From the NCBI RefSeq assembly GCF_963921235.1, contig NC_086098.1, forward strand, positions 85,560,001 through 85,624,000: a DNA stretch of 64,000 bases, in the 5' to 3' direction. Origin of the DNA: Mobula hypostoma. Taxonomy: Eukaryota. The stretch's first letter is position 1. Each line of letters starts with the position of its first letter. The translations under genes were made by a program, and so were the position numbers. Positions 10,568-62,233 of this stretch are shown here, in pieces. The notes below the pieces were generated by a model, which was not told where the DNA came from, did no database searches, and saw only the letters and a program-made list of their open reading frames with translations.

Positions 10568-10586
10568 TTTCTTTCAGAAGCTGTAA

Positions 10587-12340: not shown

Positions 12341-12341
12341 A

Positions 12342-14968: not shown

Positions 14969-15009
14969 TTATATTTGGCAGGAGGAGTCATATAATTAAA
15001 GGGATAACG

Positions 15010-20829: not shown

Positions 20830-21047
20830 TATTACAGCACCAGTGACCTGGGCTCAATTCCACCGCTATCTGAAAGGAGTTTCTATGTTTTCCCATAACT
20901 TCATTGGTTTCCTCTGGGTGCTCCGGTTTCCTCCCACATTCCAAAGACATACGGGTTACTGGGTTAATTGGTTATATGAGTGTAATTGTGCAACGTGGGC
21001 TCGTTGAGCCAGAAGGGCCTGTTACTATGCTGTCTCTCTAAATAAAT
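20830..21047 (+). repeat. V-SINE with TAAA tail
   Basis: GGGTGCTCCGGTTTCCTCCCACATTCCAAAGAC core. Confidence 0.75.
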
Positions 21048-21149
21048 AAACCACTTACTTTTCTAACCTGAATCATTTGTACTCTGCAAGGCATCAATTC
21101 TTCAACACTAAGAAACAAAAACAGACTTGAGACCTGAAGATGTCCAAAA

Positions 21150-21450
21150 GTGTTCAGCAAACCAATCAAGCACTTCTGAAATGTATTTGCTTCAGTAATG
21201 TAGGAAAAATGGCAGCCAACTGTCAGGCAGCAAGACCCAACAACAGCAATGTAAAAATAACCAGATAATCTATTATAACAATGTTGATTAAGGGACATAT
21301 TTTGGTTAGGACACAAAGGAAAATTCCATTGCTCCTTGAAATAACTTCCACGGGCTCTTTTATGTCCACTTTGGTTTATTGTTTCATTCAAAAGGTGGCA
21401 CCTCTTACAGCACGGCCCATTCTCAACCGTACACTCTGAACTGAGGAAGA
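21150..21450 (-). repeat. Deu-domain SINE relic (related copies near 51030-51310, 59895-60000, 63810-64000)
   Basis: GGACAC...GGG(C/A)TCTTTTA(T/C)GTCCAC...GGTTTA..GT.TCAT.C.AAAG..GGCACCTC..ACAG pattern. Confidence 0.6.
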
Positions 21451-21639
21451 CACAAATCAGAACCATGAGCAAATCCCTCAGACTCTTCAGTCTGTTGTGC
21501 CATTCAGCAAGATCATGGGTGATTTAGTTGTAACCACAACTCCACAGTTTCATCTTTCAGCCCCTTGCTTACCAAGGAAGGTTTTGTTTAATTCAGAAAC
21601 CATTTTTAAAACACGACAATATCTCTGGCAGGTTAATGA

Positions 21640-22047
21640 GAATTACCACCGTCTGGGCTCCCTCCTCACTGCTACCATCGGACAGGATATACAGGACTCT
21701 TGGATCCCATACCACAAGGTTTGGGAGCAGTTGTTGCCCTGCAACCATCAGCCGTTTGAACCAGCATGGATAACTTCACCCAACTCAACCCTGAAATGAT
21801 TCTACAACCTACAGACTCACTTACTCACTTTCAAGGACTCTACAACTCATGTTCTCAGTGTTTTTTTTTAAATTGCATAATTTGTCGTCTTTTGCATATT
21901 GTTTTTGTCAGTCTTCGTTTATGTATAGTTTTTCATAAATTCTACTGAATTTCTTTATTTTCCTGTAAATCCCAGCAAGGAATGAACCTCAAGATAGTTT
22001 ATTGTGACATATACATACTTTGATAATAAATTTACTTTGACTTTGAA
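21640..22047 (+). mobile_element. Rex-type LINE 3' end
   Basis: Ends TTTGATAATAAATTTACTTTGACTTTGA; similar to 1400-1620. Confidence 0.7.
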
Positions 22048-22239
22048 TTTTGATAGTAGAATAAAAAGAAATAACAATCTTATACAGTATTTCCATTGTA
22101 CCTTTCACAACTTTAGTGCTTTATAGTCATTATGTTATTTTTTGGATTATTTGTTGTAAAAAGGAAAAACAAAAATCATTACATCATTATTATTCAGTTT
22201 CAGGAAAAGGATTGAAAAGATGAGAAGGAAAAAAAAGCA

Positions 22240-22245
22240 TTTATT
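22240..22245 (-). terminator. Candidate GPATCH11 polyadenylation signal (AATAAA)
   Basis: AATAAA on the minus strand about 600 nt after the stop codon, followed by T-rich sequence. Confidence 0.4.
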
Positions 22246-22839
22246 CATAAAACTTAAATAAACACATTTTATGGCAAAATAACAGTAGGGAATACACGGC
22301 CTCAAAACCTGCACTGGAGTAAAAATACAAATGAACACATATTACAACATCAATCTCATATCCAGATCATGTCTAATACTCACTGAGTGTTACTTTTTAA
22401 TAATGAAGATAAACACAGTTTGCTGATCAGGAATTTGAAATTAATTACTCACAATCTGTCTCCGAATGACTTTCAGGTTAAGTTTGATGAATGTTATAAT
22501 TACTACATCCAAACCTCTCACTGTGAATCATCCACAAGCAAATCACACTACCTGCTGTGGATCAATAAACACATTAAAATATTTAAAAAGGAAAGAAATA
22601 GGTACAGTTGCCCGCTGGTCATGAAACTTGGGAAAGTGGGAGACAGCTGAGTTTCAGCGGAATTAGCACAGTTTATCTTTCAGCAACTTTCTTTTAAAGC
22701 GGAAGGTAGAATTGGCTCCAAATGCACTAATCCTCAGAGCTGTAATGACCTGTGTGCTTTGTGAGGTTGCATTCAGAAATTGCTTCATTCCAGCTTCGGT
22801 ACAGCGTGCAAGTCCTACCATTAGCATTCTGAGCTGCAG

Positions 22840-22895
22840 TCAGCAGTGGTCAGCAGCACAATTTCCAGGGCAGTTATTGCACAGGTCCTCCTCAT
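22840..22895 (-). CDS. GPATCH11: GPATCH11 terminal coding exon
   Basis: ttccag|AT GAG GAG GAC CTG TGC...CAC TGC TGA = (D)EEDLCNNCPGNCAADHC*. Confidence 0.93.
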
Positions 22896-25800
22896 CTGGA
22901 ATTCAAAATCAAGAACATCATTTATCAGAACAAGAAAAAAGGGGTATCTATTTCTACAGGATCTTCACAATCTAAAGAGCGCTTTGCAGTCTTTAAATCT
23001 TTTTATTGAATAAGTATACAAAAAGGTAAGCCATATAGACACTAATACACTGTTAGAATATAATAAAATTACAGAAGATATTAATACAAAAAAAAATACT
23101 ACAATGCAATTTAAACATAACATACCAAGGTAACATAATAGTATACTAATTTTTATATATATATCAATAGAGAAAAGGAAAAAAAAAAACCCCAAAAAAA
23201 CCCCACCGTGCAACTAACTAAAAGCAAAGCAAAGCAATGGGCTAACTTGAAACCAAACAGAGTTAAACTTAAAATCACGTCCTCAATCCCGACCTCCATT
23301 AAAAACAGTAAAAAAAACACCAAGGGTATATATTACATCAAATGAAAATATTGAATAAAAGATCTCCAAGTCTGTTCAAATTTAAATGAGGAGTCATAAA
23401 GATTGCTTCTAATTTTCTCCAAATTCAAGCATAATATCATCTGAGAAAACCAAAAAAAGGTAGTTGGAGCATTAAGCTCTTTCCAATGTTGTAAGATACA
23501 TCTTTTCGCCATTAAAGTAAGAAATGCAATCATTCTATGGGCTGAAGGGGAAAGATTACTGGAAATTTTAGGTAGTCCAAAGATAGCAGTAATAGGGTGA
23601 GGAGAGATATCTATATTCAATACCTTGGAGATAATATTAAAAATGTCTCTCCAAAAAGTTTCCAAAGTAGGGCAAGACCAAAACATATGAGTTAAAGAGG
23701 CTATCTGCCCCAGACATCTATCACAAAAAGGATTAATATGAGAATAAAAGCGCGCTAACTTATCTTTGGACATATGTGCTCTATGAACAACTTTAAATTG
23801 AATTAGGGAATGTTTAGCACAGATAGAGGAAGTATTGACTAATTGTAAAATATGCCCCCAGTCATCCACGGAAATGGTAAACCCCAATTCCTGTTCCCAA
23901 TCTACCCTAATCTTATCAAATGGAGCTTTCCTAAGTTTCATAATAATATTATAAATCATAGCCGATGCACTTTTCTGACATGGATTAAGGTTAATTATAG
24001 TATCTAAAATGTATGTAGGAGGAAGCATTGGAAAGGAAGAAAGTATAGTACTTAGGAAATTTCTAACTTGTAGATATCTAAAAAAATGTATTCTTGATAA
24101 GTTATATTTATTAGATAATTGTTCAAAAGACATAAGGGAACCATCTAAAAATAAATCCAAAAACCGTGAAATACCCTTAGTCTTCCAAATTTGAAAAGCA
24201 CGATCCGTAAAAGGGGGAGGAAAAAATATGTTACCTAAAATAGGAATCGCTAACCCAAATTGATTAAGATCAAAAAATTTTCTGAATTGAAACCAAATAC
24301 GTAAGGTATATTTAACTATCGGATTAGACACCTGTTTAAGGCGTTTCAAATCAAAAGGAAGAGAGGAACCTAAAATAGAGCCAAGTGTAAAACCCTGAAC
24401 AGATTGTAATTCCAATGCAACCCACTTAGGAATGGATAGTAACCAGAATTTCACATGTCGACTATTAATTGCCAATAATAAAATCTAAAGTTAGGTAATG
24501 CTAAACCTCCATCTCTCTTAGCTTTCTGTAAATGTATTTTACCCAGTCTCGGGTTTTTATTCTGCCAAATAAATGAAGAAATTTTAGAGTCAACTTTGTC
24601 AAAAAAAGATTTTGGAACAAAGATTGGTAATGCCTGAAATATATATAAAAATTTTGGCCAAAAAAACATCTTAACTGCATTAATACGACCAATCAAAGTT
24701 AAATATAAAGGAAACCATTTAGATGAAAGTTGAATAATATGGTCTATTAATGGTAAAAAGTTAGTCTTAAATAAATCTTTGTATTTACAAGTAATTTTAA
24801 TCCCAAGATATGAAAAATAATTATTAATCAATTTAAATGGAAATTTATAATATAAGGGAAGTTGTTTATTAATCGGAAAGAGTTCACTCTTACTAAGATT
24901 TAATTTATAACCTGAAAAAAGACCAAATTGTGCTAATAGCTCTAGAACAGCCGGGATGAATTTTTGAGGATTAGAAATATATAAAAGTAAATCATCAGCA
25001 TAGAGTGATATTTTATGGGACTTTAAGCCCCGAGTTATCCCAGTAATATTTGGAGATTCTCGAATGGCAATTGCAAGAGGTTCTAATGCAATATCAAATA
25101 ATAAGGGACTAAGAGGACAACCTTGTCGAGTACCTCGAAAAAGAGGGAAAAAAGGTGAACTTAAAAAGTTAGTACGGACTGAGGCCACAGGAGAATGATA
25201 TAACAGTTTAATCCAGGATATAAATTTTGAGCTAAAATTAAATATTTCAAGCACCTTAAATAAATAAGGCCATTCTACTCTATCAAAAGCTTTCTCAGCA
25301 TCTAAAGAGCTAACACACTCAGAAACATTTTGTGAGGGAGTATAAACAATATTTAACAGTGTGCGAATATTATAAAAAGAGTAACGACCTTTAATAAAAC
25401 CCGTTTGGTCTTCCGAAATAATAGAAGGAAGTACTTTTTCTAATCTATTTGCTAATAACTTAGAAAAAACTTTAGAATCAACATTTAATAAAGATATTGG
25501 CCTATAAGATGCACATTGAGCAGGATCTTTATCCTTCTTTAATATTAGAGAAATTGACGCTCTATTGAAAGATTCAGGAAGTTTACCAAGTTTTAATGAA
25601 GCCTCAAAAACCCTACAGAGCCAAGGGATTAATGAAGGAGCAAAACATTTATAAAATTCTACGGTAAACCCATCAGGGCCAGGAGCTTTCCCCAAATTCA
25701 TAGAGAAAATAACATTCTTAATCTCATCCATGGTAATGGGAGTATCTAACATAGAAGACATATCCTGTGAAACCTCAGGGAAGTCTAAATTATCTAAAAA

Positions 25801-28800
25801 ATCATTCATATATTTAGAATCTCGAGGAGACTCTGATTGATATAAGGAAGAGTAAAAATCACAGAAGGTTTGATTAATCCCCACATGATCAAGTATCAGT
25901 CGATCATTTTGGTTATAAATCTGATTAATTTGAGATTTAGCATAATTAGACTTCAGTTGATTAGCCAACAGTTTGCCAATTTTGTCACTGTGTACATAAA
26001 ATTCACTTCTTGTTTTCTTTAATTGGTCTACAATTGAGGACGAGAGTAATAAACTGTGTTCCATTTGAAGTTCAGTTCTTTGTTTATATAACTCCTCAGA
26101 AGGAGCTATAACATATTTCTTATCAATTTCCTTAATCTTGTCCACAATTACCAACTCCTCCTGCTTCAGCTTCTTCCTCAAAGCAGCAGAATACGAGATA
26201 ATCTGACCACGAATATAAGCTTTAAAAGTATCCCAAAGAATGTTGACAGAAATATCCTCTGTATAGTTAATTGTAAAAAAAAGATCAATCTGTTCATTCA
26301 TAAAATTAACAAAGTCCGAGTCCTGAAGCAACAGCGAATTAAAACGCCATTGCCTATTATTTAATATATTGGCCAGAATTTTAATAGAAAGTTTAAGTGG
26401 AGCATGATCCGAAATGGTTATAGAGTCATAATCACATTTAATCACTGAGGAAATAAGACGAGAATCAATAAAGAAATAATCAATTCTTGAATAGGAATGA
26501 TGAACATGTGAAAAAAAAGAAAAATCTTTTTCCTGAGGATGCAAAAAACGCCAAATGTCCGTCGACCCAGAATCAGAAAGGAATGAATTAATCAAAGTTG
26601 CAGATTTATTAGGTAAGATCCGTAGAGGAGCCGAACGGTCCAAAGCTGGAGATAAACAAGTATTAAGATCTCCGCCCCAGATCAATGAAAACTCATTCAA
26701 ATTCGGGAACTGATTGAATAATGATTTATAAAATTCCGGACAGTCCATATTAGGAAAATAAACATTAACCAAAACTACCTTTTTATTAAATAGTAGACCA
26801 CTAACCAATAGAAATCTACCATTCGGATCAGAAATAATATCATGTTGTATAAAAGTAACTGAGAGGTCTATAAAAATAGAGACGCTTCAAATCTTAGCAT
26901 TGGAGTTCAAATGAAACTGTTGTCCCTTCCAGAATTTAAAAAAACGTAGTCTGTCCCCCCCTCCGCACATGGGTCTCTTGTAAAAATAAAATTTGTGCTT
27001 TAAGTCTCCGGAACACTTTAAAAACTTTTTTCCTTTTAATAGGATGATTAAGACCATTAGTATTCCAGGAGACAAAATTAATAATAGACTCCATAAACCC
27101 TAAAGTCAACCCGCAACAAGGAGGATTGACGATAGGCTCGACCCACGAACCCGGAAAGGGAACAGAACATACAAGAGATACCGGGAAAAAGAACGCAACC
27201 AATACTTCAATAATGTATATAGCCCAAGAAGAAAGAAACTAAAACGTGAAACCCCTCCCACCACCCCCACCCCATGACCCCAAGGCTAAATCTAACGCAG
27301 ACCAGCCCGAAAGAAGCAAGCACTAAAACTACCCCCATGACTTCCGGTATACGCTCCCTTAAAAAAAAGTGTAAATATAAAAAAGATCAGCTGATTATAA
27401 AACAGTAAAAGAATAAAAAAAGATAACTCAATTAAAATAAACACATAACAGAATAAAAGCCAGAAAATATTTTAAAAAACCGCAATAAACCCCAGACCCA
27501 TGAGTAAACGAAACAACAAAAAAAAATGAGATTATTAACATAAACTAGTTATAAAAACCTACAAAACAAAATAAATTTTTTAAAAAACTACAAAATTTAA
27601 GGCCACAAAGGAAATACGTAAAATGACGATGAGGAAGTAACCACCCAGAATCCCCTGGGAAAAAGAAAGAAATGACGCAGTTAAAAAGAAAGTTTAGCAA
27701 CCATATTAAGTAATCAAAAATAAACTTTTCTGCCCAAATAGGGCAAAAAAAAATTAAGACCGACAATTTCGCAGCCTCCGATCAACGGAGATAGTTAAAA
27801 TATTACGATTAAGATGTTGAAGGTGAAAATTGATCCAGATAACTCTGGGCATCTGATGGAGATTCAAAAAAACGGAGGGCTCCATCCAGCGTACGAATCC
27901 TTAAACGTGCAGGGTAAAGCAGCGCTGGTTTTAAATCCATCTTGTCGAGTTCCGACATCACAGATCTGCAACGAACCCGTTGATCTCGGATTGGTTTACT
28001 GAAATCCTCCACGAATCAGAACTTAAGATCCAAAAAATCAATGAAACCTTTAGATCAAATGAATCGAAACAGTTTCTCCTTGTCTTGAAAGTAATGAAAA
28101 CGTAAAATGACATGTCTAGGTTTATCTGACCTAGGCGAGTATGATGGAACTCTGTGAACACGATCCAATAACGGTGGTTGGTCAGGAAATACAGTAGGAA
28201 ATGCATCTTTTAAAAGTTGAGAAAAATACTTCATAGGGTTATCGGATTCAACAGCTTCACACACCCCAATCATTCGAAGATTCTGCCGTCGCATTCTAGA
28301 TTCTAAGTCAGAGTTTTTAAAGGTCAGAAAGTCGAGTTTCTTCTTCATTACATTAATTGTTTCTTCGATTTTCTCCATCTTGAGCTCACTTTGTTGCGTG
28401 GATTTTTGAAGATCAGATATAGCCGACCGATGTTCCGTAATAGATATCTGTATCTTCTCGATTGAATCGGCAACTTTCTGGAAACTAATTGAAATTTCCG
28501 CACGAATCAGCTCCGTAACAGAGGTTGAAATTTCCCTTTGAATTAGCTCCGATATAGCTTTCAAAGACACCGGTGGTTCAGTCGGAGGGAAATCAGTACC
28601 TTTCGGTCTAACCGGAGGTTTGCCATCCTTCCCGTTTTTTCCATTCTTAGACATAGCAGACCTTAAACGCATCCAATTATCGGAGAGCCCAATTTATTTC
28701 AAAGTATTGTAAAAGTTGATGCTTTAATTAATGGTTAATTAAAATATAGCTGATCATAAGAAGAAAAACTCAGAGGTAATGGAGCGAGTCAAGAACGCAA

Positions 28801-31800
28801 CTTCACTCCATGAGCGCTACCGGAAGTCCCAAGAGCGCTTTGCAGTCAATGAAGTTGTTTTGATTGCAATGCAGAAACATGTTACATTATGTATTTGACA
28901 GAAGGTGGAGAAAGGCTCTCCCCTTTGAAATCCTACTATTTATTTAACCATCTGAAATGAAGGTGTTTAAGCAGAGCAATCTTCTAATTAGCCTCTAATA
29001 TCCAGTCATAACACACAGGATGAAATATTCCGGTACTATGCCTGGCATTCAGGATGTGTTTCTGGGAAATTGTTCTGCAATGGAATCAGTGTAAAAGGAG
29101 ATAGAACGTAGAAGAGTACAGCACAGGAACAGGCCATTTGGCCCACAATGATACGCCAAACCAAGCAAAAAGTAATCAAAAACACACAAACACTAATCCC
29201 TCCTATCTACACTATGTCCATATCCCTCCATTTTTTTTACATCCATGTGCCTATCCAAGTGTCTCTTATAAGCCTCTGATGTATTTGCCTCTACCACCAC
29301 ACCAGGCAGCACAGTCTAGTCATCCATGACTCTCTGAATAGAAACTTATCTCTCACATCCCCCTCGAACCTACCCCCTCTCACCTTCAATATATGCCCTC
29401 TGGTATTCCATATTTCAACACTGGGAAACAGATACTCTCTGTCCACTCTATCTATTCCTCTCATAATCTTGTAAACCTCTATCAGATCTCCCCTCAGTCT
29501 CTGGAGAAAACAACCAAAGTTTATCCAGCCCCTTATGATAGCACATGCCCTCTAAACTAGGCAGCATCCTGGTAAACCTCTTCTGCGCCCTCTACAAAGC
29601 ATCAACATCCTTCCTATAGTGGGGCAACCAGAACTGTATGCAATACTTCAGATGTGGCCTCACCAGAGTTCTTGAAAACATTTATTAATTTTAAGGTGAT
29701 TGAAGGGAAGTATAGGAAGGATGTCAGAGGAAAACTTTTTTTTCTTACACAGACAGTGGTGGGTGCAAAGAACACACTGCCAGGGGTGGTGGTAGAGGCA
29801 GATACATTGGGGACATTTAAGAAACTCTAAAATAAGCACATGGGCAATAGAAAAATGGAGCGATACAGTATGTGGGAACGAAGGGAGAGATTGACCTCAT
29901 AGTAGGTTAAAGGATTGGCAAAACATTGTAAACCAAAGGACCTGTACCGTGCTATAGTGGTCTATGTTCCACGTTTTAAAATTGTGCATTACTGAAACCA
30001 ATGTTGTGCACACCGGGGTGAAACTGATTCTGCAGATGCCAGAAATCTTGACCAACACACACAAAATGCTGGAGGAACCCAGCAAGTCAGGCAACACCTA
30101 TGGAGGGAAATAAACAACCCCTCCATAGATGCTGCCCGGCTTGCTGAGTTCCTCCAGTATTTTGTGTGTGTTGCGGCATAAATCCCTACCTCCCACGCTT
30201 GCAGTGCAGACTGCTCACAGTTTGGCGTGGTAAGACTGCCTGTAAAGGCATTGCTGGGTTGCAGGACCAAGTGAGTCACCAGTGTACATGTAAAATTACT
30301 CTAACATTCAGAACATGTTTGATCTTCTAGGCAGGTATATTTGGCAAAGCTTAGTATCCCCTCAACTTGCTGAGCAAGTCTTGGGCAAATGGAAGCTGAA
30401 AGTCACATACAATGTAAAGTGCAACTGTAACACTGCTTATTCTGTACAAAAGTCTCCTCATATCCCTGTTCATATAACACTAACAACAATCTTTCTTGTA
30501 TGTTTATCTCGAACCTCTTTAAATAGATCCATGCTGCTTTTCTCAACTATTCTTCATACTAGCAAGTTCCACATTCTAAGTTTCTGAGTAATTGAGTTTC
30601 TCTCAATTATGTGCCTTTTGTGTTGTAAACTTCTAGGCTTCTATTAACAGATCCTGATCAAAAAGCTTATTGACAACATTTGCCTGACAGTTCACCGCTC
30701 TCGCTGCATTCCCCAGAATGTGGCTTCCTGTACCACTTGCCTCCAACTGGTGGGTTAGCCTTTGGTTATCTACACTTTGGGTTCTATAAACCATCTTCAA
30801 AAACCAAATAAACTACTTAAGGACAGCACAAGGCTGTGAAAGTCACCAGTATCTTTTTTAAAGTACATTTTAAATATTGGTCACAAAGAATTCTCCCAAA
30901 ACAGGATGAATTACTTCCGAGTATTTGTTAAATTATCTGGGATACATTCAAAGTACCATTGGATAATGTCTGAGGTGGTACTGGGCTGATTGTGACATTT
31001 TTGTTACCATTCTTAAATCATCAATTAAAGGTGACACAAACTGTTAATTCAGTATGAAAACAATCATGCATTCATCTATAAACTTTCTGATGGCAGCTAA
31101 CAGATTTATATAATTTTTTTTTACCTTCGTAGGAAATTGCACACCAAATACAGTAGAAATAGGTCTTTCTGAGATAGTCTGTCACTGCCTGTAGCTTTTC
31201 TTCAGTCTGGAAACAAGAAAACATTGTTTCAATTAGTATGTTATGTTGTTATAAGAACTAGAAGGTGACATTATAGAGATTTTTAAAATCATAAAGGGCA
31301 TAGATAAGGCGGATGGTTAGCAGCCTGTTCAGCAGGGTAGGGGAGTTGAGAAGGGAAAGATTTAAAAAGGAATTGAAGGACAATTATTTAAATATAATGA
31401 GTATATGGAATAAGCTGCCAGAGGAAGTGGTTGATGTAGGTACAATAGTGGTATATTTAGGTATATGGAGTCTGGTGGGGGTTGAGGGGGGAAGGAATTT
31501 AGAGGTATATATGCCCAAAGCTAGGTGGGTACCTTGATTGACAAGGATCCATTGGGTCAAAGGGCTGTATTGCTCTATGATTATTTTACAACTGGATAAA
31601 CTGGATAATTTGTATGTACCTGATGTGGTTCACCAAGTCCTTACACATTACAGTGAGGTGAGAAGAGAATAATTCCTGGCTCAATGGCCTTTGGGAATAT
31701 GAAATATAGAGGGCAGGATGTTGCCAATTAAATTAAAGCAGAGCAAGCTCCAAGAATCCTTATTCTAAAACTATATCCCCAGGTCTAGATTCCCCACAAG

Positions 31801-34800: not shown

Positions 34801-37800
34801 TGTGCAGCAAAAAACAAGCACGGGTTTCACAAGCTAGGCATATATTTGAGCCTGATCATGTCACTTACTAGGAAAATGTTTTTTCAAAGTCTTATATAAA
34901 GTTGCGTCTTAGGCTATATTTTTATTCATATTGCTTTGGCTTATGGTTTTTAGTAACTTCACTACTCAATATTGTCAATGTTCATGTTGTAAAATAGCAT
35001 TAATTAAAATCAATCTACAACCTTTATTTAAATTAAATCTACCTTTAGAAAAGTTAAATCGCATTTTGGCTTAAGCCAGTTATTTAACAGAAACTTATTG
35101 TGTTTGCCTTATGAGTTTTTAAAAAAGAAAGAGATTAAGTTCAAGAAAGGTAAGCTAAGCTTAACCATCTGTTTTTTCCAAGGAAGGTTGGCTAAAAATT
35201 CATTCTCTACTCAAAAGAGCATTGGCAATTATTCTTGGATGACTATGTCTACAACTTAATGATCATATTAATGTACCGTGAGCTGTAGGTATAATTTTTA
35301 CGCAGGAGTTCCCTGAGACCTGAAAATTATTTCCTGGGTTCCCCCAAAGAAAAAAAGGTTGAGAAAGGCTGCTCTAGACCAACTCATGTCAAAAACCAAG
35401 GATGGGCTCAACCAAATAAACGTGGTCCTACTGCGCACTGCCATACTGGGCTGAGAGACCTCTAATGAGATTGCAAACGGGGCTGCTCAGTCACTGCCCA
35501 CCACTGTGAACGCTAGCATTGTGAGTTGCACAATTCAAAAAACGATGTTTATTTTTTAAAAATCACTACCTCTTGCGCAAACGCTAGCGAACTCTCGCGG
35601 AACCCTGATTGAGAAACACTGCTCTACACTGTTGATGATTGAAGTTAAACTGGCAGTTAACTGACTGGAAGATACCTCAAGGTCAATTCTTAGTGTTGTC
35701 CATTCGATAGTACAACTTATTCTAAAATTACAATATAGCTTGAAGATTAAGAAAGATACAGTGAAAATTCCCATACTGTTTCAAACTTCTGAACATCTGA
35801 TTCATCCTCGTCATCTTCTTCCTCATTATCAGTGGGCAGCCAATACCATGTTTTCTCTGGGATATCTATACCCTGTGCAAAAAAGTGAGGAAGAACATTT
35901 AGAAAGATATAAAAGTTAAACAGCTGTATGCTCTTACACAAATGCACATTCACAAAAACTAACTTTACTCTTTGCAATATACATCAAAGTTGCTGGTGAA
36001 CGCAGCAGGCCAAGCAGCATCTATAGGAAGAGGCGCAGTCGACGTTTCAGGCCGAGACCCTTCGTCAGGACTAACTGAAGGAAGAGTGAGTACTCTTCCT
36101 TCAGTTAGTCCTGACGAAGGGTCTCGGCCTGAAACTTCGACTGCGCCTCTTCCTATAGATGCTGCTTGGCCTGCTGCGTTCACCAGCAACTTTGATGTAT
36201 ATTGCTTGAATTTCCAGCATCTGCAGAATTCCTGTTGTTTACTCTTTGCACATCGTTTTACAGAATGCTAATGCATGCCACATTGTATTGCTAAGCGTGC
36301 AATGAACTTGCAAACACAAGAGATTCTGCAGGTGCTGGAAATCCACAGCAACACACACAAAATGCTGCAGGGACTCAGCAAATCAGTAGCATCTATGAAG
36401 GAGAATAAGCAGTTGATGTTTTGAGCTAAGACCCTTCATCAGGACTGGAAGTGATGGCGTCAGTGAACAGAAGACAGTTCACAAAACAACTTCATTTACT
36501 TCTTCATCTTTCAAGTATGATTCAAAGATTTCAAGATTGCAAAGTACATTTATTATCAAAGAATGTATAAGTTATACAACTTTGAGATTTGTTTGCTTAC
36601 AGGCAGCCAGGCAGCCACAAAGGAAGAAACCAAAAGGGACCCAATTAAAAAAAAGACCCACACCCGATGTGCAGAGAAAGGGGAAGAAAAACACAAATCA
36701 AGCAAACAATAGTAGTGAGCAACAACATCCTGACCCAAAATGAGAGCATGAATCTGAAGCCTAGAGTAGGCATGAGCCTCAGTATCAGTCCATCACATGA
36801 GCACAGAGCACAGCAGTTGGGGCAGTCTTCACAGAGAGAGAGAGAGGAGGGACAGAGGGACGGAGGGAGAGAGCAGCTGGGGAGGGCAGAGAGGTGGGTA
36901 GGGGGTGTAGGGGTTGTGAGGGGTAGGGTTGGGGGGGTGGGGAGAGAGAGAGACTCTTGTCTTTGATCGTGTAAATTGTCCAAAAAGCACATGGTACCTC
37001 ACACTAGGACCCAGGCACCACTACAGCGAAAGCCTGAAACATGCCGCCTAGCAAATCGCTCTGGCCCAGACTTTGTCCCCCCAGTCTGAGGCCACTCTTG
37101 ATTTCTTCAAATCGGCTTGCTGCCCAGTGTGATCCAACCTTGCACCCAGGCCAATTGGATGGGCTTCGGAGCTATTCTGCTTCTGGTCACAAGGGTGTAA
37201 TTGGGCAGCGTAGGACAAAAGAACGTAAACTAAACATCAAAGCTGGTATGGAAGAAGAAATCAGGAATCCATGGGAAGTTGTGGAAACCTAGAATACTCT
37301 CCCCAAAATGAACCGAATTATTCAACAAGACTGATAGATTTTCACCATCTAAAGCTTACAAGTGATATGGGGGGGTACAGTTCAGCAAAAAAACTGCAGA
37401 AAATCAGTTTACCTTCTTTTCATCCAGTTGTTGACAGGCAAACTGGCTCTTCCGTAAATCACTTTCCATCTGACTTTGGTCCTTTTTGAATCTGAAACGT
37501 ACCCTAGAACGTAAAAAGGGGAAAAGAATAAAACAACCTAATTGAAATTAGAGAGGCAGAGACTGGTCAGGGATAGCTAGCACAGCATCTATAGAAATTT
37601 GTCATAGTCTTAGATGACATCACAAATCTATGTAAACTTATAAGAATGTAGAAGTAATTCGTGCCTTCTTTGTGAGGACACTGACATGCTAGTATAATAT
37701 ATTGAATGAATTATAATGGCTGAAATTGATAGAATGATAGGGTGGGTTATAGCCAACGGACTCTGTACAATAGGCTATATTGGCTCGAGTCAGTACAATT

Positions 37801-40800
37801 GGCAGAGTGGATAGGATGCAATAGACTAGTTACTGGATTCTGTATGGGTTAAATTATCTGGAATCTGTACAACTGATATAGTGCTTTAGACCAAGTGGCA
37901 TTTATACATTTGGTGCAACTGGATGTGCTGTGAATAGTTTTGAGGAGGAGGAAATACAATGCCCCAAAATTTGACTGAATCAGGTCATAGTGCATGGGAG
38001 CTGCTTTCAGCTTTCAGGCTATATTATTTTTGGATATGAAACATAAGCAGATAATAGTGTAATGTGAGGCAGTGAATATTGATAAACAACAGGGTTCAGT
38101 CTTACTCTGTTTAAATATTTAAATAATAGGATTTAGTAAGTAGCAATAGGGTGAATAAAGCATTAGATTAGACACAGAAGGATATACACTCAGTGGGCAC
38201 TGTATTAAGTATCTCCTGTACCTAAGAAGGTGGCCACTGAATATGTGCTCAGTCTTCTGCCTCTGTTGTCCATCCACTTCAAGGTTCGATGTGTTGTGCA
38301 TTCAGAGATGCTCTTCTGCACACCACTGTTGTAACATGTAATTTATTCGAGCTACTGCTGTCTTCCTGGCAGCTTGAACCAGGCTGGGCATTCTCCTCTG
38401 ACCTTTCTCATTAACAAGGCATTTTCATCCACAGAACTGCCACTCACTGGAGCAGCACACACAAAATGCTGAAGATCAAGCACCATCTATGGAAATGAAC
38501 AAACAGTTGACGATGCTCCCCGACTTGCTGAGTTGCTCCAGCAATTTGTTTTTGTTCTGGATTGCAGCATCTGCAGAATCTCTTGTTTACGATTTGCTGC
38601 TCACCGGACATATTTTGTTTCTAGGACCATTCTCTGAAAACGCTGGAGACTGTTATGTGTGAAAATCTCAGGAGATCAGCAGATTCTGGGATACTCAACC
38701 AACCCTTATCTGTCCACCAACAACCACTCCACGGTCGAAGTTACTTGGATCACATTCCTTCCCCTTTCTGATGTTTGGTCTGAACAACAACTGAACCTCT
38801 TGACCATTTCTGCATGCTTTTATGCACTGCATTGCTGCCACAATTGGCTGATTATATATTTGATTTAACAAGTTGGTGTATAGTTGTACCTAATAAAGTG
38901 GCCACTGAGTGGAAACAAGAATTAATTTATATGGGAAAAGGTATAGAAAGAAAAAATACAAGAAAAACTCTCTATTAGTAGTAAATTGAGAGAGTGAGAC
39001 TCCACAGTATCAATTCTTCCTTTTCTGGCTTTCTAAGTTTGAATTTCACAATAAGATCATTAATTAGATCCAAATCAGGGTCCTCAAAATGTGAAATATC
39101 TGAAGTGGGTTCATTTGTAGTTACCATGGAAATCCAGAAATTATTTGATACTTCAGAGGTAGGTAACAGTGCACCCCATACTTACAAACTTTGTACAAGG
39201 CAATGGGAATTTGTCTTACAATGTGTTAATACACTCAATCACCACTTTATTAGGTACACCCGTACACCTCCTTGCTAATGCAAATTATCTAATCAGCTAA
39301 TTATGTCACAGCAACTCAAGGCACATAAGCATGTAGGCATGGGCAAGAGGTTCAGTTATAGTTCACATCAAACATCCGAATGGGGACGAAATGTGATCTA
39401 AGTAACTTTGATCGTGGAATGACAGAGTGCTTTGAATATCTCAGAATCTGCTGATCTCTTGGGATTTTCACACACAACAGTCTCTAGAATTTACAGAAAA
39501 TGGTGCGAGAAACAAAAAATATCCAGTGAGGAGCAGTTCTGTAGATGAAAATGCCTGGTTAATGAGAGAGGTCAGAGGATACTGGCCAGACTAGTTCGAG
39601 CTAATGGGAAGGTGACAGTAACTCAGATAACCTCATTTACAACAGTGGTGCGCAAAAGAGCACCTCTGAATGCACAACATGCCGGACCTTGAAGTTGATA
39701 AGCTACAGTAGCAGAAGACCATGATTGTACACTCAGTGGCCATTTTTATTAGGTACAGGAGGTATTTAATAAAGAGGCCACTGAGTATATTTCCAGATGT
39801 CACAAAGTCAGAATTTTGGGCCAATGAAAAATGGTGATAACATATAAAAGCCACTTTTTGAAATTTGTAGACATGTCCTCCCCAGTAGTGGAATCTACCA
39901 ATGTAAAGTTAGCTTGATACCGTCCTACAAGGGTGGTGCTCCTGTCACCACAGGGCTGGACAGACACAACTAGAAAGGGACAAGTTTGCAAGCAATTTTC
40001 ATTGATAGTCTGCTTGGGTATAAATTTAAAACCCATCCTCAAGTCAGTCAGACCATTCTCAGTCTGAATTCTGCCTGTGTACAAGAACTTAAAAGTTTTT
40101 CTATCCCCAATCATCACTGTAGCTATAATAATTTGAAATAAGATATCGATAATGACAATGCTAACACCCACAAGGTTATTAGGGATGGGGTTGTGGTTAT
40201 TAGGGATGGGGTTGTCTTTCCATCTAGGCTGAGGAAGGCCGAATACATGGCACTGAATGTACAGGTGACCAGAAGCTGACACAAATTGTTGGGTCCCATC
40301 TGGTTCATGTTCAGTGACCAGGGTTTGGTTCCTATTGGAAACAAGTTATGTTTCCACCTTAAAATATTATGGGTTAAATTGTTTCTATAAATTCATGCTT
40401 TGTATTAAATAAATATATCAGGTAGTCATATACTGTACCTATAATCATTAAAGGCAGCCTTCTCTGCCTGCTTTTTGACTTGCATCAATCGCTTTCGATA
40501 TTCCATCCTTTCCTCAGCTTTCCGTTTCTTAGCTAGTTCATGGCCAATCCCGCCACGTCCTTTAATGGTTTAAGAAAAAAATTTGTATTTCAGTCAATCA
40601 AACACAAGCACTGCAACAAGTTTGCAAGCAATATCATTGCCCCTGAGACCACTCATTCCTCCCTACTAATCTCCCTCCTGGCATTTATCCCTGCAAATGG
40701 CCAAGTTGCCCATTCACCTCCTCCCTTGCCGCCATTCAGGGCCCCAAACAGTCTTTCCAGGTGAGGCAACACTTTACCTGCGAATCCACTGGGGTTTATC

Positions 40801-43800: not shown

Positions 43801-46456
43801 AACACATGGGAGTAAAGCAGAGGTAAGTTGATATTCAATTCTCTCCTTTGAGATCACTACACATCATAGATCGATAGAGATACATTTTATGTCTATTTTA
43901 TCAGGTTACTTTATACTGAATGATTTACGTTGGGATATTTTACCATTTATGAAAACACACATTCTAGCTGATCCTTAAAATAATGGACCATTAAAGCAGT
44001 AATAAATTCCTTTGATTAATTCATGCTGCAGCTTAGACATACAACTTCTGAAAAATGGTTCAAGTGTAGCAGAAGATTACTGGATACACACCATTCCTGC
44101 CAAGTCCTCGGCCTTCTTTATACCCCATCTTCTGAAGCAATGCAAAGCCTTTATTTTCACTTCCCAACGAGCACTGTAGCATGGACTCACGCCTTTCCTC
44201 TTCACGACTCACTCTTTTCTGGGTCTTTTCCTGCTCAGGTTTTTTCTCCTGGTGCCTTTTCACTTTTTCCACCTTTACCAGTCCTGGCTTGACATCCTGT
44301 CTATGGGCACATTAAAATCAGTTTGCTTTCATTATCTTCCCTTTGATCCTTGGCCGGAACCTTAAATCAATTCTTCCAATTATCAACACCACCTTTTCTC
44401 CACTCTACCAAAGCAAATGGTATGATTTGTGTAATTCTGGTTGCCCAGCTATAGGATGTCACTGAGCTGGAAAGGATGCATAAAAAATTCACAAGGATGT
44501 TACCAGAAGGAGAGGGATTGAGTTATAAGAGACTGGATAGTCTGGGCCTTTTTCCTGGAGCATAAGAGGTTGAAAGAGTTGTATAAAATCATGAGGGGCA
44601 CAGATAAGGTCATTTTCCCAGGATATGGAAGTCTAGGACTAGAGGACATATGTTTGAGGTAGGAGGGGAAAGATTTAAAAGGGACCCGATGGGTATTTTT
44701 TCAGATAGTGGGCAGTGGGTATATGGAAAGAGGTGCCACAGGAAGCTATAGAAGCATATACACATACAATTCTTAAAAGATATTTGAACAGATACAGGAG
44801 AAGGCAAAGAGGAATATGGACCTCTGCAGGTACAAATGTAAATAGGACCGGTTCATTTTGACATCTTGGTCAGCAATTGACCTGAAGGGACTGTTTCTAT
44901 GCTTTATGACTCTTCTTAATTCAGTAAGTATATCTGATCAACTCTATAAGGAGGCCCATAACAAATATTGCTCTAAAGAGAATAATTCCAAGTCCTTTAA
45001 CTGTGATACCAGTTAATCTCCACTGTATTTCTCCGAAGCTGTGTTATTCTGCTTTAGGTTATTACTCGACACAAATCTTCAGTCAAGACCCAAACATTTA
45101 TAATAAAGGGTTTGCAAAATTCCTTGACTTCATGGCTAAATATTCACTGTGCCAACGATGGTCTAAATTTCAACTAATAAAAGGCAATAGATGTTCACTT
45201 CTCAGCATCATTACCAGCTTTGGGACAGAACTGTAACATGTTAAGTAACAGTAAAAATGTGATTACATTATTCAAAAGAAAAGGAAGGAGTTCTCCTGGC
45301 AAATTTGTTAACACTACACTCTGAATCGGCATTAATTAAATAACATTTATTTATTCACCTTGTGGGAATTCAGCAGCAGTTTTCCACAGTTGCCTATGAT
45401 AACTATTAAGTCTTTCATTGTTAGAGAAGACTCTGGTATAACTGTAAGCAAATAGTTTCTACTAAGTATGACACAGACTTGTAACATAGCTGTAACAGAT
45501 TCCAGTAGCACAGTCAGTGCTGCTGATTCACTACTCGATGAGCAAGGTTTCATCCTGACTTCAGGTTCCGTCACTGTGGAGTTTGCATATTTTGTCTTTG
45601 ATGTCGCAAGACAACAAACTTCAAGTCATTTTAGCAGTCGGTGATAATAAATCTGATCCTGACTGCAACACACACACAAAATGCTGGAGGAACTCAGCAA
45701 ATAAGGCAATGTCTATTGAGGGGAATAAACAGTTGATGTTTTGGGCTGAGACCCTTCATCAGGGCTGGAGAAAACCTCACCCCCTTCCTTTCCAATCCTG
45801 ATGAAGGGTCTCAGTGAGAAACATCTATTGTCTATGTACCTCCATAGATGCTGTCTGACTTGCTGAGTTCATCCGGCAATTTGTGTATGCTGCTCGTTTC
45901 CTAGCATCTACACAATGTCTTGTGTACCTGATTCTAACTGCACTGATTTCTTCCACATCGTTAAGACACCTAGGTTGGCCGCTTAATTGGCAGCTGCAAA
46001 TCACTCCTAGTTTAAGTGGGTGATGGGAAAATCGGGGAATTAATGGACATGAGAGTGAGAGTATTTTACGGGGAAATAAATGTGAGAATGGGGTTACTCA
46101 AGACTGGGGGTGGGCGTCATGGAATATGCAATGACAAACTTTTGAGTCTAACTTCAGCTGTCATTTTCCTTAACACTGAGCAGCAGGAAGCAAGCACTGC
46201 GCGGCCGAAGACACCAAGACAAACTGCTTCAGGCCAGGCTGCGAAGTTAGTGGAAGAGGCAGAACTCGTCACCGTAAGGGGCGGGTCTGACACCGGCAGA
46301 CGACGTGCCGGCTGCAGTATCGTTCATGTTTCACCACAATGACCATTCTGGTTGAGGCCCAATCCCAGAACCCTGAAGGATAGCTTACTCAAAATTTATA
46401 AAAGCATCTGACATATAATCTTCACCCTCTTCCTCCTCCTGTTCCTGGGTCGCCAT
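22840..46456 (-). CDS. GPATCH11: G-patch domain-containing protein 11, complete 8-exon CDS: join(46389-46456, 44092-44300, 42284-42325, 40439-40559, 37413-37503, 35777-35872, 31125-31206, 22840-22895)
   Basis: Spliced translation MATQEQEEEEGEDYMSDAFINFEQDVKPGL...[47 protein letters not shown]...[27 protein letters not shown]...[43 protein letters not shown] matches my recollection of vertebrate GPATCH11 (EDYMSD motif, G-patch, C-terminal YCIWC...CPG). All introns GT-AG with compatible phases. Head-to-head with HEATR5B as in human. Confidence 0.96.
23333..27094 (-). pseudogene. L1 ORF2p (APE endonuclease + RT + C-terminal Cys motif), disrupted by 2 frameshifts and a stop
   Basis: SWNTNGL...FLQETH, GGDLN, SRIDYFF, SDHAP, KAPGPDGF, LDAEKAFDRVEW, GTRQGCPLSPLLF, LYADD, CDRC...HMFWSC; breaks near 26955 (G run), 26887 (TGA) and 24470. 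Confidence 0.93.
27809..28672 (-). pseudogene. L1 ORF1p (coiled coil + RRM + CTD), frameshifted
   Basis: DLESRMRRQNLRMIGV...LDRVHRV...KPRHVILRFHYFQDKE, then a shift to EDFSKPIRDQR...LLYPARLRI. Confidence 0.9.
29100..29970. mobile_element. Divergently arranged CR1 3' fragments (29100-29670 minus; 29690-29970 plus)
   Basis: CR1 tails at both outer ends; mutually complementary bodies. Confidence 0.75.
30025..30175. repeat. Palindromic Penelope-terminus insertion
   Basis: CAACACACACAAAATGCTGGAGGAAC...GTTCCTCCAGTATTTTGTGTGTGTTG inverted arms. Confidence 0.8.
31125..31206 (-). CDS. GPATCH11: GPATCH11 exon 7
   Basis: [27 protein letters not shown]; ttccag|...G|GTAAAA, 82 bp. Confidence 0.94.
32500..33190. 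mobile_element. pogo/Tigger-like non-autonomous DNA transposon relic
   Basis: Right end TGTCCCAATTAACCGGAATCCACTG with internal AATTGGG repeats; left end degenerate. Confidence 0.55.
33800..35371 (+). mobile_element. hAT (Charlie/Buster-like) transposon, internally deleted
   Basis: TIRs CATTGTTTCTCAACC / GGTTGAGAAAGGCTG; 8-bp TSD ATCTAGAC (33792) / CTCTAGAC (35372); ORF 34317-34784 carries an hAT dimerisation-type region (FWISVKEYP...LLQFSNSYMCEQAFS). Confidence 0.88.
35380..35621 (-). mobile_element. Inverted left-end fragment of the same hAT family
   Basis: Reverse complement CAGTGTTTCTCAATCAGGGTTCCGCGAGAG... aligns by eye to 33800-34040; flanked by CTCTACAC. Confidence 0.8.
35777..35872 (-). 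CDS. GPATCH11: GPATCH11 exon 6 (acidic)
   Basis: [32 protein letters not shown]; gcacag|...ACA|GTATGG. Confidence 0.92.
36036..36073 (-). ncRNA. Minimal type I hammerhead ribozyme motif (intact core)
   Basis: TAGTC-CTGACGA-AGGGTCTCGGCCT-GAAA-C-GTC-GACTG: stem I AGTC/GACT, CUGANGA, stem II, GAAA, GUC triplet. Confidence 0.75.
36106..36143 (+). ncRNA. Mirror hammerhead motif (GTC changed to TTC)
   Basis: TAGTC-CTGACGA-AGGGTCTCGGCCT-GAAA-C-TTC-GACTG. Confidence 0.6.
37413..37503 (-). CDS. GPATCH11: GPATCH11 exon 5
   Basis: [30 protein letters not shown]; ttctag|...AAG|GTAAAC, 91 bp. Confidence 0.93.
38187..38911 (-). mobile_element. Tc1/mariner non-autonomous element containing a Penelope palindrome (~38452-38590)
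   Basis: CACTCAGTGG(G/C)CAC..TATTA.GTA terminal repeats at both ends; TA on the left flank. Confidence 0.82.
39232..39787 (+). mobile_element. Tc1/mariner non-autonomous element, TA-flanked
   Basis: TIRs at both ends, TA TSD, degenerate MG.KCDLS.FDRG transposase N-terminus. Confidence 0.85.
39790..40380 (-). pseudogene. Possible degenerate retrovirus/LTR-type reverse transcriptase relic
   Basis: Correctly ordered, frameshifted motif-like strings: FGLPQPRWKDNP, YSYSDDWG, LRMGFKFIPKQT, CPFLVVSV. Confidence 0.4.
40439..40559 (-). CDS. GPATCH11: GPATCH11 exon 4
   Basis: RGGIGHELAKKRKAEERMEYRKRLMQVKKQAEKAAFNDY; ag/gt boundaries, 121 bp. Confidence 0.93.
40640..41400 (+). mobile_element. Penelope-like element 3' part (GIY-YIG + terminus)
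   Basis: GPKQSFQVRQHFTC, GLLYIAET, EEQHLIFCLGSLQPDGMDMDF; degenerate hammerhead at 41302-41339. Confidence 0.85.
42284..42325 (-). CDS. GPATCH11: GPATCH11 exon 3 (42 bp, [13 protein letters not shown])
   Basis: ttttgcag| ... AAG|GTTTGT; G-patch GIxEPI motif. Confidence 0.93.
42776..43360. mobile_element. Two convergent CR1 3' ends (42776-43090 plus; 43138-43360 minus)
   Basis: RGHSFKV...FFTQRVVSAWNGLP; TTTCTATG tails. Confidence 0.8.
44092..44300 (-). CDS. GPATCH11: GPATCH11 exon 2 (start of G-patch)
   Basis: catag| acceptor; QDVKPGL...[29 protein letters not shown] donor. Confidence 0.95.
44430..44910 (+). mobile_element. CR1 LINE 3' fragment
   Basis: Degenerate CR1 C-terminus, ATGACTCT tail. 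Confidence 0.65.
45668..45927. mobile_element. Older palindromic Penelope-terminus insertion with two degenerate hammerheads
   Basis: Inverted termini; CTGATGA-AGGGTCTCAG motif on both strands (~45730-45768 minus, ~45793-45830 plus); diverged TSD CTGATCCTGACTGCA / CTGATTCTAACTGCA. Confidence 0.8.
46389..46456 (-). CDS. GPATCH11: GPATCH11 coding exon 1 (MATQEQEEEEGEDYMSDAFINF)
   Basis: ATG in AAGATGGCG context; donor GA|GTAAGC. Confidence 0.93.
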
Positions 46457-49500: not shown

Positions 49501-49699
49501 ATACGAGATTCTGCAAATGCCGGAAAAATTGAGTAACACCCACAAGTCGCTGGAAGATCTCAGCAAGTCGGGCAGCATCTGTGGAGGGGAATAAATAAGC
49601 CGATGTTTCGCTCTCTGTCAGCTCAGAACCTTTACTGTTCATTCCCCTCCATAGATGCTGTCTGATCCACTGAGATTTTGCAGCATCTTGTGTGTTTTA
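49501..49699. repeat. Palindromic Penelope-terminus insertion
   Basis: Inverted GCAGCATCT.TGGAGGGGAAT arms; diverged TSD CATCTGTCATTT / CACCTATCATTT. Confidence 0.7.
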
Positions 49700-62180: not shown

Positions 62181-62233
62181 TAAATAATAAAAATAATACG
62201 TTTTTTAAAAAAAGAGGAAAGGAAATGTTGACA

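What the first reader, a model, noticed from the sequence alone, without database searches (positions are those of the whole stretch)
35964..36250. TSD-flanked 232-bp hairpin carrying a hammerhead ribozyme on each strand, just upstream of GPATCH11 exon 6
Seen: two 114-bp inverted arms (35974-36087 and 36092-36205; 4-nt loop; single mismatch at 36043/36136) inside a 13-bp TSD. Each arm has TAGTC-CTGACGA-AGGGTCTCGGCCT-GAAA-C-(G/T)TC-GACTG. The intact GUC copy is on the minus strand, sense to the GPATCH11 pre-mRNA. Its predicted cut lies between 36041 and 36040, about 170 nt upstream of the exon 6 acceptor. Known: Penelope-like elements carry minimal type I hammerheads with a vestigial palindromic stem III that are thought to cleave as dimers. 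Inference: on either strand the antisense arm is transcribed before the ribozyme arm, so the element would self-sequester as long dsRNA. That would make it an intron-tolerated ribozyme cassette, possibly switchable by A-to-I editing or a helicase. The only mismatch between the arms falls in the cleavage triplet of the plus-strand copy.
Basis: partly seen in the sequence, partly recalled or inferred. Interest (0 to 1): 0.8.

Follow-up and report, generated by a model that had tools for sequence, protein, structure and literature searches.

The report
Young inverted Penelope retrotransposon insertion in intron
The hairpin is real, but it is an ordinary, very recent insertion of an extremely abundant Penelope-like retrotransposon end, laid down in that family's usual inverted form, and its hammerhead motifs are passengers with no sign of a host function.

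Summary
Two 114-nt inverted arms (35974-36087 and 36092-36205) differ at one base, have a 4-nt spacer and lie inside an exact 13-bp target-site duplication. Each strand carries a minimal hammerhead motif.

One detail was missed. The insert is asymmetric: the right arm runs on for 32 nt (36206-36237) before the duplication.

That is the published anatomy of a Penelope-like element (PLE) insertion: heavy 5' truncation, an adjacent inverted 5'-truncated copy, and a 30-40 bp "tail" at one end only. Seven such pairs lie in this 64-kb window. All have their 5' ends at the centre and a tail on exactly one arm. Arm identity runs from 100% down to 67%, so the hairpins decay.

A longer copy (about 15019-15170) ends a decayed ORF with reverse-transcriptase-like and GIY-YIG-like motifs. 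A contig from a related species joins 35963 directly to 36238, a precise empty site, so the insertion is lineage-specific.

The single sense motif cannot form the dimer this ribozyme class needs, and it is locked in a -247 kcal/mol hairpin. Nothing supports a switchable ribozyme cassette. First-stage notes of this scan describe the same family on many other pieces of this genome. Low interest; a new member of a known kind.

The parts
35964..35976 (.). Left copy of the 13-bp target-site duplication (TTTACTCTTTGCA). Its last 3 nt (GCA) are shared with the start of the left arm.
   Evidence: family D3, 100% identical. The organism-B contig carries a single copy at the empty site.
35977..36087 (-). 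Left arm: the 3'-terminal ~114 nt of the PLE family, 5'-truncated, element sense on the minus strand (the same sense as the host pre-mRNA), with no tail.
   Evidence: nhmmer E 7.7e-25.
36036..36073 (-). Minimal hammerhead motif with the ACGU palindrome and GUC. The predicted scissile bond lies between 36041 and 36040.
   Evidence: Read directly; segment positions computed; no Rfam hit.
36088..36091 (.). 4-nt spacer (GAGT) at the centre, where the two 5'-truncated ends meet.
36092..36205 (+). Right arm: the same 114 nt of the element, sense on the plus strand.
   Evidence: nhmmer E 1.3e-24.
36106..36143 (+). Minimal hammerhead motif with UUC; the ACGU palindrome is broken to ACUU by the single arm mismatch at 36136.
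36206..36237 (+). 32-nt 'tail': the optional 3' extension of the element, present on this arm only.
   Evidence: The same tail ends the copies at 36316-36345(-), 15019-15050(-), 45895-45923(+) and 62234-62262(-). The literature describes a 30-40 bp tail at one end (PMC8557442; PMC11167929).
36238..36250 (.). Right copy of the 13-bp target-site duplication.
   Evidence: empty site.
35777..35872 (-). Host exon (96 nt) of the G-patch gene, 105 nt downstream (in transcript sense) of the insert.
   Evidence: Acceptor cag|G and donor A|GTATGG read. The RNA-run contig depth of 82-84 fits these limits exactly.
36316..36470 (-). Older, separate copy of the same family (73% identity), with tail. Its motif is dead (GAAA changed to AAAA).

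Best explanation
This is a very young, lineage-specific insertion of the 3' end of a Penelope-like retrotransposon (PLE) into an intron of a G-patch gene. It was laid down in the inverted-pair form typical of PLEs.

Inferred mechanism. The element's endonuclease made nicks 13 bp apart on the two target strands, and both 3'-OH ends primed reverse transcription of element RNA.
- The minus-strand end started at the outer start site, which gives the 32-nt tail.
- The plus-strand end started at the inner start site, on a 3-nt GCA microhomology, which gives no tail.
- Both cDNAs stopped at the same point, about 19 nt upstream of the hammerhead core, and were joined with 4 nt between them.

The result is two 5'-truncated copies with their 5' ends together and their 3' ends outward.

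The hammerhead motifs are part of the element's terminal sequence and came along as passengers. In the host pre-mRNA the region should fold as a 114-bp hairpin. The one sense motif has no partner for the dimer it needs, so it is expected to be inert.

What is shown: the anatomy, the family membership, the recurrence and the empty site. What is inferred: the priming of both strands, and the inertness of the motif.
For: - Anatomy: arms, spacer, duplication and one-sided 32-nt tail.
- Recurrence: nhmmer finds 23 family hits in the window. Among them are 7 inverted pairs, all (-)(+), meaning the 5' ends face each other, against one (+)(-) adjacency. Each pair has the tail on exactly one arm.
- Duplications: the pair at 62234-62376 is of the same subfamily and has an exact 15-bp duplication. 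Four older pairs have diverged duplications, matched over 13-nt windows with 2-3 mismatches.
- Inner ends: in most pairs the inner ends differ between the arms. One pair joins at a GGCC microhomology (62298-62301). This points to two separate cDNAs.
- Link to a PLE: the copy at about 15019-15170(-) ends a decayed ORF with an LPKIHKPD motif and a YTGET...R...EH...HFNS motif. Protein-atlas feature hits go to GIY-YIG / HTH_animal / RVT_1 clusters.
- Empty site: an organism-B contig of 529 nt at single-copy depth 42.8 lies on 35535-35963 and on 36238-36337. An organism-C contig stops matching exactly at 35976.
- Abundance: element bins reach 10^6-10^7 word depth against 15-45 in the flank.
- Decay: arm identity across the 7 pairs runs from 100% down to 67%.
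- Literature: an inverted 5'-truncated copy plus a 30-40 bp tail at one end is typical of PLEs (PMC8557442). A PLE protein cleaves and extends both strands and has two start sites that bound the tail (PMC11167929). Minimal hammerheads sit in PLE repeats, pairs on opposite strands were seen 100-700 bp apart, single motifs are inactive and dimers weak (PMC4209133).
- Energetics: hairpin -247.1 kcal/mol. The double-hammerhead fold of two isolated arms scores -12.9 against a dimer minimum of -35.0.
Against: - No read or contig spans the whole palindrome at this locus. Short-read contigs break in the repeat, so the inner junction rests on the assembly alone.
- This copy carries no ORF, so its PLE membership rests on sequence identity to the family and on architecture.
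- The PLE ORF next to the copy at 15019 got no Pfam hit for RT or GIY-YIG, and the large protein search gave one unnamed hit.
- The two arms end at exactly the same base. A fold-back copy of one cDNA would also produce that, so the priming of both strands is not proven for this copy.
- No RNA data at read level were available, so cleavage or editing was not tested.
Confidence: 0.87

Rival explanations
1. One reading: the hairpin is an intron-tolerated ribozyme cassette. The sense hammerhead is kept silent as dsRNA and can be unmasked by A-to-I editing or a helicase to cut the pre-mRNA upstream of the exon.
For: The core of the minus-strand motif is complete, including the ACGU palindrome and GUC. 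The antisense-first geometry and the hairpin fold are real. Long intronic dsRNA is a known class of ADAR substrate (general knowledge).
Against: - The insert is absent from two related species.
- It is one of 7 such pairs in the window, and those pairs decay with age.
- There is only one sense motif per strand, and this class needs a dimer (PMC4209133, PMC6765202).
- The nearby same-sense copy has lost G12.
- Both motifs have a G10.1-U11.1 wobble.
- The active fold is disfavoured even in isolated arms.
- The exon is still found in RNA.
Confidence: 0.03
2. The palindrome is an assembly or fold-back read artefact laid over a simple single-arm insertion.
For: No contig or read examined spans the centre. 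PLE inverted structures are known to trouble assemblies (PMC8557442).
Against: - Both outer junctions are of the element type expected for two outward-facing 3' ends, and they are flanked by an exact duplication.
- The empty site in organism B removes exactly 274 bp.
- The arms differ in the tail and at one base.
- The same architecture recurs six more times in the window, five of those pairs with diverged arms that no artefact would give.
- An organism-A contig crosses the left junction with 0 mismatches.
Confidence: 0.03
3. It is a fold-back or MITE-like DNA transposon with terminal inverted repeats, moved by a transposase, not a retrotransposed PLE fragment.
For: Near-perfect inverted arms inside a short duplication look superficially like a MITE.
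Against: - The ends are unequal, with a 32-nt tail on one side only.
- The inner junction differs from pair to pair, as 5' truncation does, while the outer ends are fixed.
- Single-arm copies are as common as pairs.
- The duplication length varies (exact ones of 13 and 15 bp).
- The same sequence forms the 3' end of an RT/GIY-YIG-like ORF-bearing element.
Confidence: 0.03
4. The perfect symmetry of this copy arose by snap-back. A single cDNA folded back, or the RT jumped onto its own product, and was copied. It did not arise by independent priming on both target strands.
For: Both arms end at exactly the same base with a 4-nt loop. The pair at 49533-49698 is also nearly symmetric.
Against: A copy of the first cDNA should reproduce its outer end, yet one arm has the tail and the other lacks it, in 7 of 7 pairs. 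Most pairs have unequal inner ends. A PLE protein extends both strands in vitro (PMC11167929).
Confidence: 0.2

Closest known systems
Penelope-like element insertions with an inverted 5'-truncated copy and a one-sided 30-40 bp tail (Evgen'ev and Arkhipova 2005; Craig et al. 2021, PMC8557442)
   Same: 5' truncation, an inverted copy joined at the 5' end, a 32-nt tail at one end only, a short duplication, and a hammerhead motif in the terminal repeat region.
   Different: This copy is extremely short: 114 + 146 nt, with no ORF and no tandem pseudo-LTR. The two arms are truncated at the same base, which gives a near-perfect hairpin.
Minimal (min-HHR) type I hammerheads of metazoan PLEs (Cervera and de la Pena 2014, PMC4209133; Lunse et al. 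2017, as cited in PMC6765202)
   Same: The CUGANGA and GAAA boxes, an unpaired base before helix II, a short helix I (5 bp), no helix III hairpin but a palindromic ACGU, and C17. That paper also noted pairs on opposite strands.
   Different: Both copies have U at 11.1 (G-U instead of the conserved G10.1-C11.1). The plus-strand copy has lost the palindrome. No activity data exist for this family.
L1 twin priming (Ostertag and Kazazian 2001; from general knowledge)
   Same: Both 3'-OH ends of a staggered break prime cDNA synthesis. This gives an inverted structure inside one target-site duplication, often joined at a microhomology.
   Different: In L1 the two segments are different parts of one RNA. 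Here both arms copy the same 3' terminus, which implies two templates or two rounds of copying.
Animal non-LTR retrozymes (Cervera and de la Pena 2020, PMC7229834; bioRxiv 10.64898/2026.07.22.740005)
   Same: Short non-autonomous hammerhead-bearing sequences related to PLE terminal repeats.
   Different: Retrozymes are direct tandem repeats with same-sense hammerheads that can dimerise and yield circular RNA. Here the copies are inverted, so neither strand has two sense motifs.

Membership tests
Penelope-like element (5'-truncated insertion) | Sequence continuity with an element that encodes RT plus a GIY-YIG endonuclease | tested here: inconclusive
   This copy has no ORF. The family copy at about 15019-15170(-) directly follows a decayed ORF with LPKIHKPD and YTGET..R..EH..HFNS motifs. 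Atlas feature hits go to GIY-YIG/HTH_animal/RVT_1 clusters at 0.94-0.96. There is no Pfam hit and only one unnamed homologue.
Penelope-like element (5'-truncated insertion) | An inverted 5'-truncated copy adjacent at the 5' end | tested here: met
   Arms 35974-36087(-) and 36092-36205(+) have their 5' ends at the centre. There are 7 such pairs in the window.
Penelope-like element (5'-truncated insertion) | An optional 30-40 bp tail, often at one end only | tested here: met
   A 32-nt tail at 36206-36237 on the right arm only; one tail per pair in 7 of 7 pairs.
Penelope-like element (5'-truncated insertion) | A target-site duplication and an empty site | tested here: met
   Exact 13-bp duplication. 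The organism-B contig joins 35963 to 36238.
Penelope-like element (5'-truncated insertion) | Partial tandem / pseudo-LTR | tested here: not met
   There is no direct tandem copy at this locus. This is expected for a copy truncated to its last ~146 nt, and it is not required of truncated copies.
Minimal type I hammerhead ribozyme (PLE type) | Conserved core boxes CUGANGA and GAAA, and H17 | tested here: met
   CUGACGA, GAAA and C17 are present on both strands.
Minimal type I hammerhead ribozyme (PLE type) | Helix II with a G10.1-C11.1 pair and an unpaired base before it | tested here: inconclusive
   The unpaired A and a 4-bp helix II are present, but 11.1 is U (G-U wobble) in both arms. U is the commoner letter among family contigs of organisms A and B, and C in organism C (place 36049).
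Minimal type I hammerhead ribozyme (PLE type) | Palindromic 15.1-16.1 segment for dimer helix III | tested here: met
   ACGU on the minus-strand copy; the plus-strand copy has ACUU, so the feature is not met there.
Minimal type I hammerhead ribozyme (PLE type) | Match to a curated hammerhead covariance model | tested here: not met
   No Rfam hammerhead family matches at gathering score or at E<=10. This is expected, because the models include a helix III hairpin that minimal motifs lack.
Minimal type I hammerhead ribozyme (PLE type) | Self-cleavage | not testable with these tools
   Only contigs of a multi-copy family were available. Published relatives cleave weakly, and only as dimers.
Animal non-LTR retrozyme | Direct tandem repeats, each unit with a same-sense hammerhead | tested here: not met
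   The copies are inverted. The one other same-sense copy found by the core scan within several kb is 374 nt away, only 73% identical, and lacks G12.
MITE / fold-back DNA transposon | Equal terminal inverted repeats with a fixed inner structure and a fixed duplication length | tested here: not met
   The ends are unequal (one-sided tail), the inner junctions vary, and the exact duplications are 13 and 15 bp.

The most novel reading that the evidence does not exclude
In the pre-mRNA, the sense hammerhead is held inactive inside the 114-bp hairpin. Once the duplex is weakened by ADAR editing or a helicase, it can pair in trans with another family transcript and cut the intron. Genome-wide, the inverted PLE pairs would then form a pool of masked ribozymes and long dsRNA inside genes.
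Probability: 0.03. Interest if true: 0.65.

Novelty: new member of a known kind. Interest (0 to 1): 0.15.

Why it matters
As a single locus it matters little. It is a neutral-looking young transposon copy in an intron.

Its modest value is as a clean natural record of PLE integration. It has an exact duplication, a precise empty site in a sister species, a tail on one arm only and microhomology at the tail-less junction. Together with six more pairs in the window that all obey the one-tail rule, this fits the in vitro finding that a PLE protein nicks and extends both strands and has two start sites. It also suggests that each strand uses a different start site.

Such pairs put long, near-perfect dsRNA hairpins into many introns of this genome. 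That could matter for ADAR or small-RNA biology, but this was not tested.

Tried and rejected
- Rfam, at gathering score and at E<=10 over 35900-36500, gave no hammerhead. The best 'hit', MIR530 (28.8 bits against an 85-bit cutoff), is spurious. It is produced by the two opposed tails at 36207-36240 and 36312-36345.
- Pfam on the ORFs next to the family copy at 15019 gave no RT or GIY-YIG hit, even at E<=10.
- The large protein search on the GIY-YIG-like ORF gave one unnamed eukaryotic hit.
- Earlier notes searched by sequence and by place near the finding returned nothing.
- Reads: only assembled contigs were available and the family is hugely multi-copy. Cleavage ends, editing and the inner junction of this locus could therefore not be read.
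- I asked whether the arms' common inner end is the hammerhead cleavage site. It is not: the end lies 46 nt upstream of the cut, and the inner ends of the other pairs are scattered.
- I asked whether the older same-sense copy 374 nt away could supply a dimer partner. I rejected this: G12 is lost, and the helix I and III strands are mismatched.
- GPATCH11 identity and the exon number were not resolved. Only the G-patch domain and the exon limits were confirmed.
Full report
**1. Observation**

The sequence is as described.
- The arms are 35974-36087 and 36092-36205: 114 nt, one mismatch (36043 versus 36136), and a 4-nt spacer.
- An exact 13-bp direct repeat lies at 35964-35976 and 36238-36250.
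- In motif sense each arm reads helix I strand UAGUC, CUGACGA, an unpaired A, a 4-bp helix II closed by a 4-nt loop, GAAA, C, then G or U, U, C, and the helix I strand GACUG.
- The minus-strand copy has ACGU/GUC. Its scissile bond would lie between 36041 and 36040, 168 nt upstream of the acceptor of a minus-strand exon.

Chance is excluded. The relaxed core pattern occurs 12 times against 1.8 expected, and the transcript folds at z = -32.

Two things were missed.
- The insert is asymmetric. After the right arm there are 32 more bases (36206-36237) before the duplication.
- Both motifs have U at 11.1.

Rfam's hammerhead models do not match. That is expected, because the motif has no helix III hairpin.

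**2. What the sequence belongs to**

Blastn and an nhmmer profile built from nine copies find 23 hits of the same family in the 64-kb window.

Longer copies run on upstream of the point where the arms here stop, so the arms are 5'-truncated.

Copies end in one of two ways: at ...TGTGTGTTGC, or about 32 nt further on, after a segment of the type ...TTTCCAGCATCTGCAGAAT.... This segment is the "tail".

The copy at about 15019-15170 (minus) directly follows a decayed ORF with two sets of motifs:
- LPKIHKPD;
- YTGET...R...EH...HFNS, a GIY-YIG-like endonuclease motif.

Feature searches place these pieces next to clusters carrying GIY-YIG, HTH_animal and RVT_1 domains. Pfam itself and a large sequence search gave nothing useful.

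The family is therefore most likely the 3' terminus of a Penelope-like element. The hammerhead lies about 100-130 nt from the element's end.

**3. The inverted form is the family's habit**

Seven inverted pairs lie in the window:
- 30053-30174
- 35974-36206
- 38451-38553
- 45669-45894
- 49533-49698
- 61091-61233
- 62263-62376

All are in the order minus then plus, so the 5' ends meet at the centre. Only one adjacency has the opposite order. Every pair has the tail on exactly one arm.

The pair at 62234-62376 is of the same young subfamily and has an exact 15-bp duplication. Its arms are truncated at different points and joined at a GGCC microhomology, and its hammerhead is cut away. An intact ribozyme is therefore not a feature of the inserted product.

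Four older pairs keep diverged duplications (13-nt matches with 2-3 mismatches). Arm-to-arm identity runs 100, 99, 89, 86, 77, 77 and 67%, so the hairpins decay like neutral sequence.

This matches the published description of PLE insertions:
- strong 5' truncation, often an inverted 5'-truncated copy at the 5' end, and a 30-40 bp tail often at one end only (PMC8557442);
- the earlier remark that minimal hammerheads occur in pairs on opposite strands (PMC4209133).

**4. Age and reality of this insertion**

I laid contigs of four public runs on 35400-36800.

Abundance:
- The element bins have word depths of 10^6-10^7, against 15-45 in the unique flank.
- This holds in the same species (organism A) and in two others (B and C). 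The family is enormously abundant.

Organism B (empty site):
- A 529-nt contig at single-copy depth (42.8) lies on 35535-35963.
- Its remaining 100 nt lie on 36238-36337. Its private variants at 36294 and 36297 are reported at the same depth and at the right distances from the end.
- This is a precise empty site with one copy of the 13-mer.

Organism C:
- A contig stops matching exactly at 35976, with 19 letters left over. The same reading fits.

Organism A:
- A contig crosses the left junction without a mismatch.
- An RNA-run contig covers exactly 35777-35872, so the exon is present in RNA.

No contig spans the centre of the palindrome. The inner junction therefore rests on the assembly, supported by the recurrence of the architecture.

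According to earlier follow-up notes of this scan, the genome is a devil ray. I did not check that.

**5. Mechanism (inferred)**

- The plus strand of the left arm is cDNA-sense and continues directly from the target's plus-strand 3' end ...TTTGCA. It shares GCA with the element's inner end.
- The minus strand of the right arm is cDNA-sense and continues from the target's minus-strand 3' end. It begins at the end of the tail.
- Both 3'-OH ends of a 13-bp staggered break therefore look like primers of reverse transcription, one at each of two start sites 32 nt apart.

This agrees with the in vitro behaviour of a lizard PLE protein (PMC11167929). That protein cleaves and extends both strands, and it starts at two internal sites that bound the tail.

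Because both arms copy the same 3' terminus, two templates or two rounds of copying are implied. This differs from L1 twin priming.

That both arms here end at the same base could mean two things: a common end of a short template, or a jump of one cDNA onto the other. Snap-back of a single cDNA fits the one-tail rule less well.

**6. The ribozyme question**

This class needs two same-sense motifs to build helix III. Published single motifs did not cleave, and dimers cleaved weakly (PMC4209133; review PMC6765202).

- In an inverted pair each strand has one sense and one antisense motif, so no dimer can form in cis.
- The core scan found one other same-sense copy within several kb (36418-36442). 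It has lost G12 and its pairing strands.
- Nearest-neighbour energies give -12.9 kcal/mol for the double-hammerhead fold of two isolated arms, against -35.0 for their minimum, and -247 for the hairpin.

All of this says the motif is inert here. It does not say the motif is poised.

**7. Verdict**

The interpretation as a Penelope-type hammerhead pair is right. The proposal of a switchable intronic cassette has no support.

The object is a new copy of a known kind, in a family that first-stage readers of this scan have already noted on many other pieces of this genome.

Noticed in passing
window 23333-28672 (-): An L1-like LINE with long open frames: an ORF1 piece (Transposase_22, 28055-28672), an RT ORF of 785 aa (RVT_1 E 7e-39, 24451-26808) and a 380-aa continuation with zf-RVT (23333-24475). 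The last two are offset by one frameshift-like overlap.
   Followed up: partly
window 15019-17618 (-): A decayed Penelope-like element body, with LPKIHKPD and GIY-YIG-like motifs in broken frames, ending in the hammerhead-bearing terminus with tail. It is the only copy in the window that links the short repeats to an ORF.
   Followed up: partly
window 62219-62391: A second young inverted pair of the same subfamily. It has an exact 15-bp duplication (AAGGAAATGTTGACA), arms 100% identical over 37 nt, unequal truncation, a GGCC microhomology at the joint, and the hammerhead core cut away.
   Followed up: yes
window 36207-36240 and 36312-36345: The tail of the young insert and the tail of the older neighbouring copy face each other (82% complementary, 71 nt apart). 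This gives a spurious weak MIR530 match in Rfam (28.8 bits, cutoff 85).
   Followed up: yes
window 44063-44311 (-): Exon encoding the start of a G-patch domain (PF01585, E 6.8e-9). It shows that the host gene runs on the minus strand. The GPATCH11 assignment is plausible but was not verified.
   Followed up: partly
window 36049 / 36130: The C11.1-to-U change of the hammerhead sits in a CpG. U is the commoner letter among family contigs in organisms A and B, and C in organism C. The recently active master may therefore have carried the G-U wobble.
   Followed up: no
window 35400-35540: Another interspersed repeat: word depth in the thousands to tens of thousands in all three species (about 3,400-10,800 in organism A, 9,500-27,000 in B, 850-3,400 in C). 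It is unrelated to the hammerhead family and was not identified.
   Followed up: no
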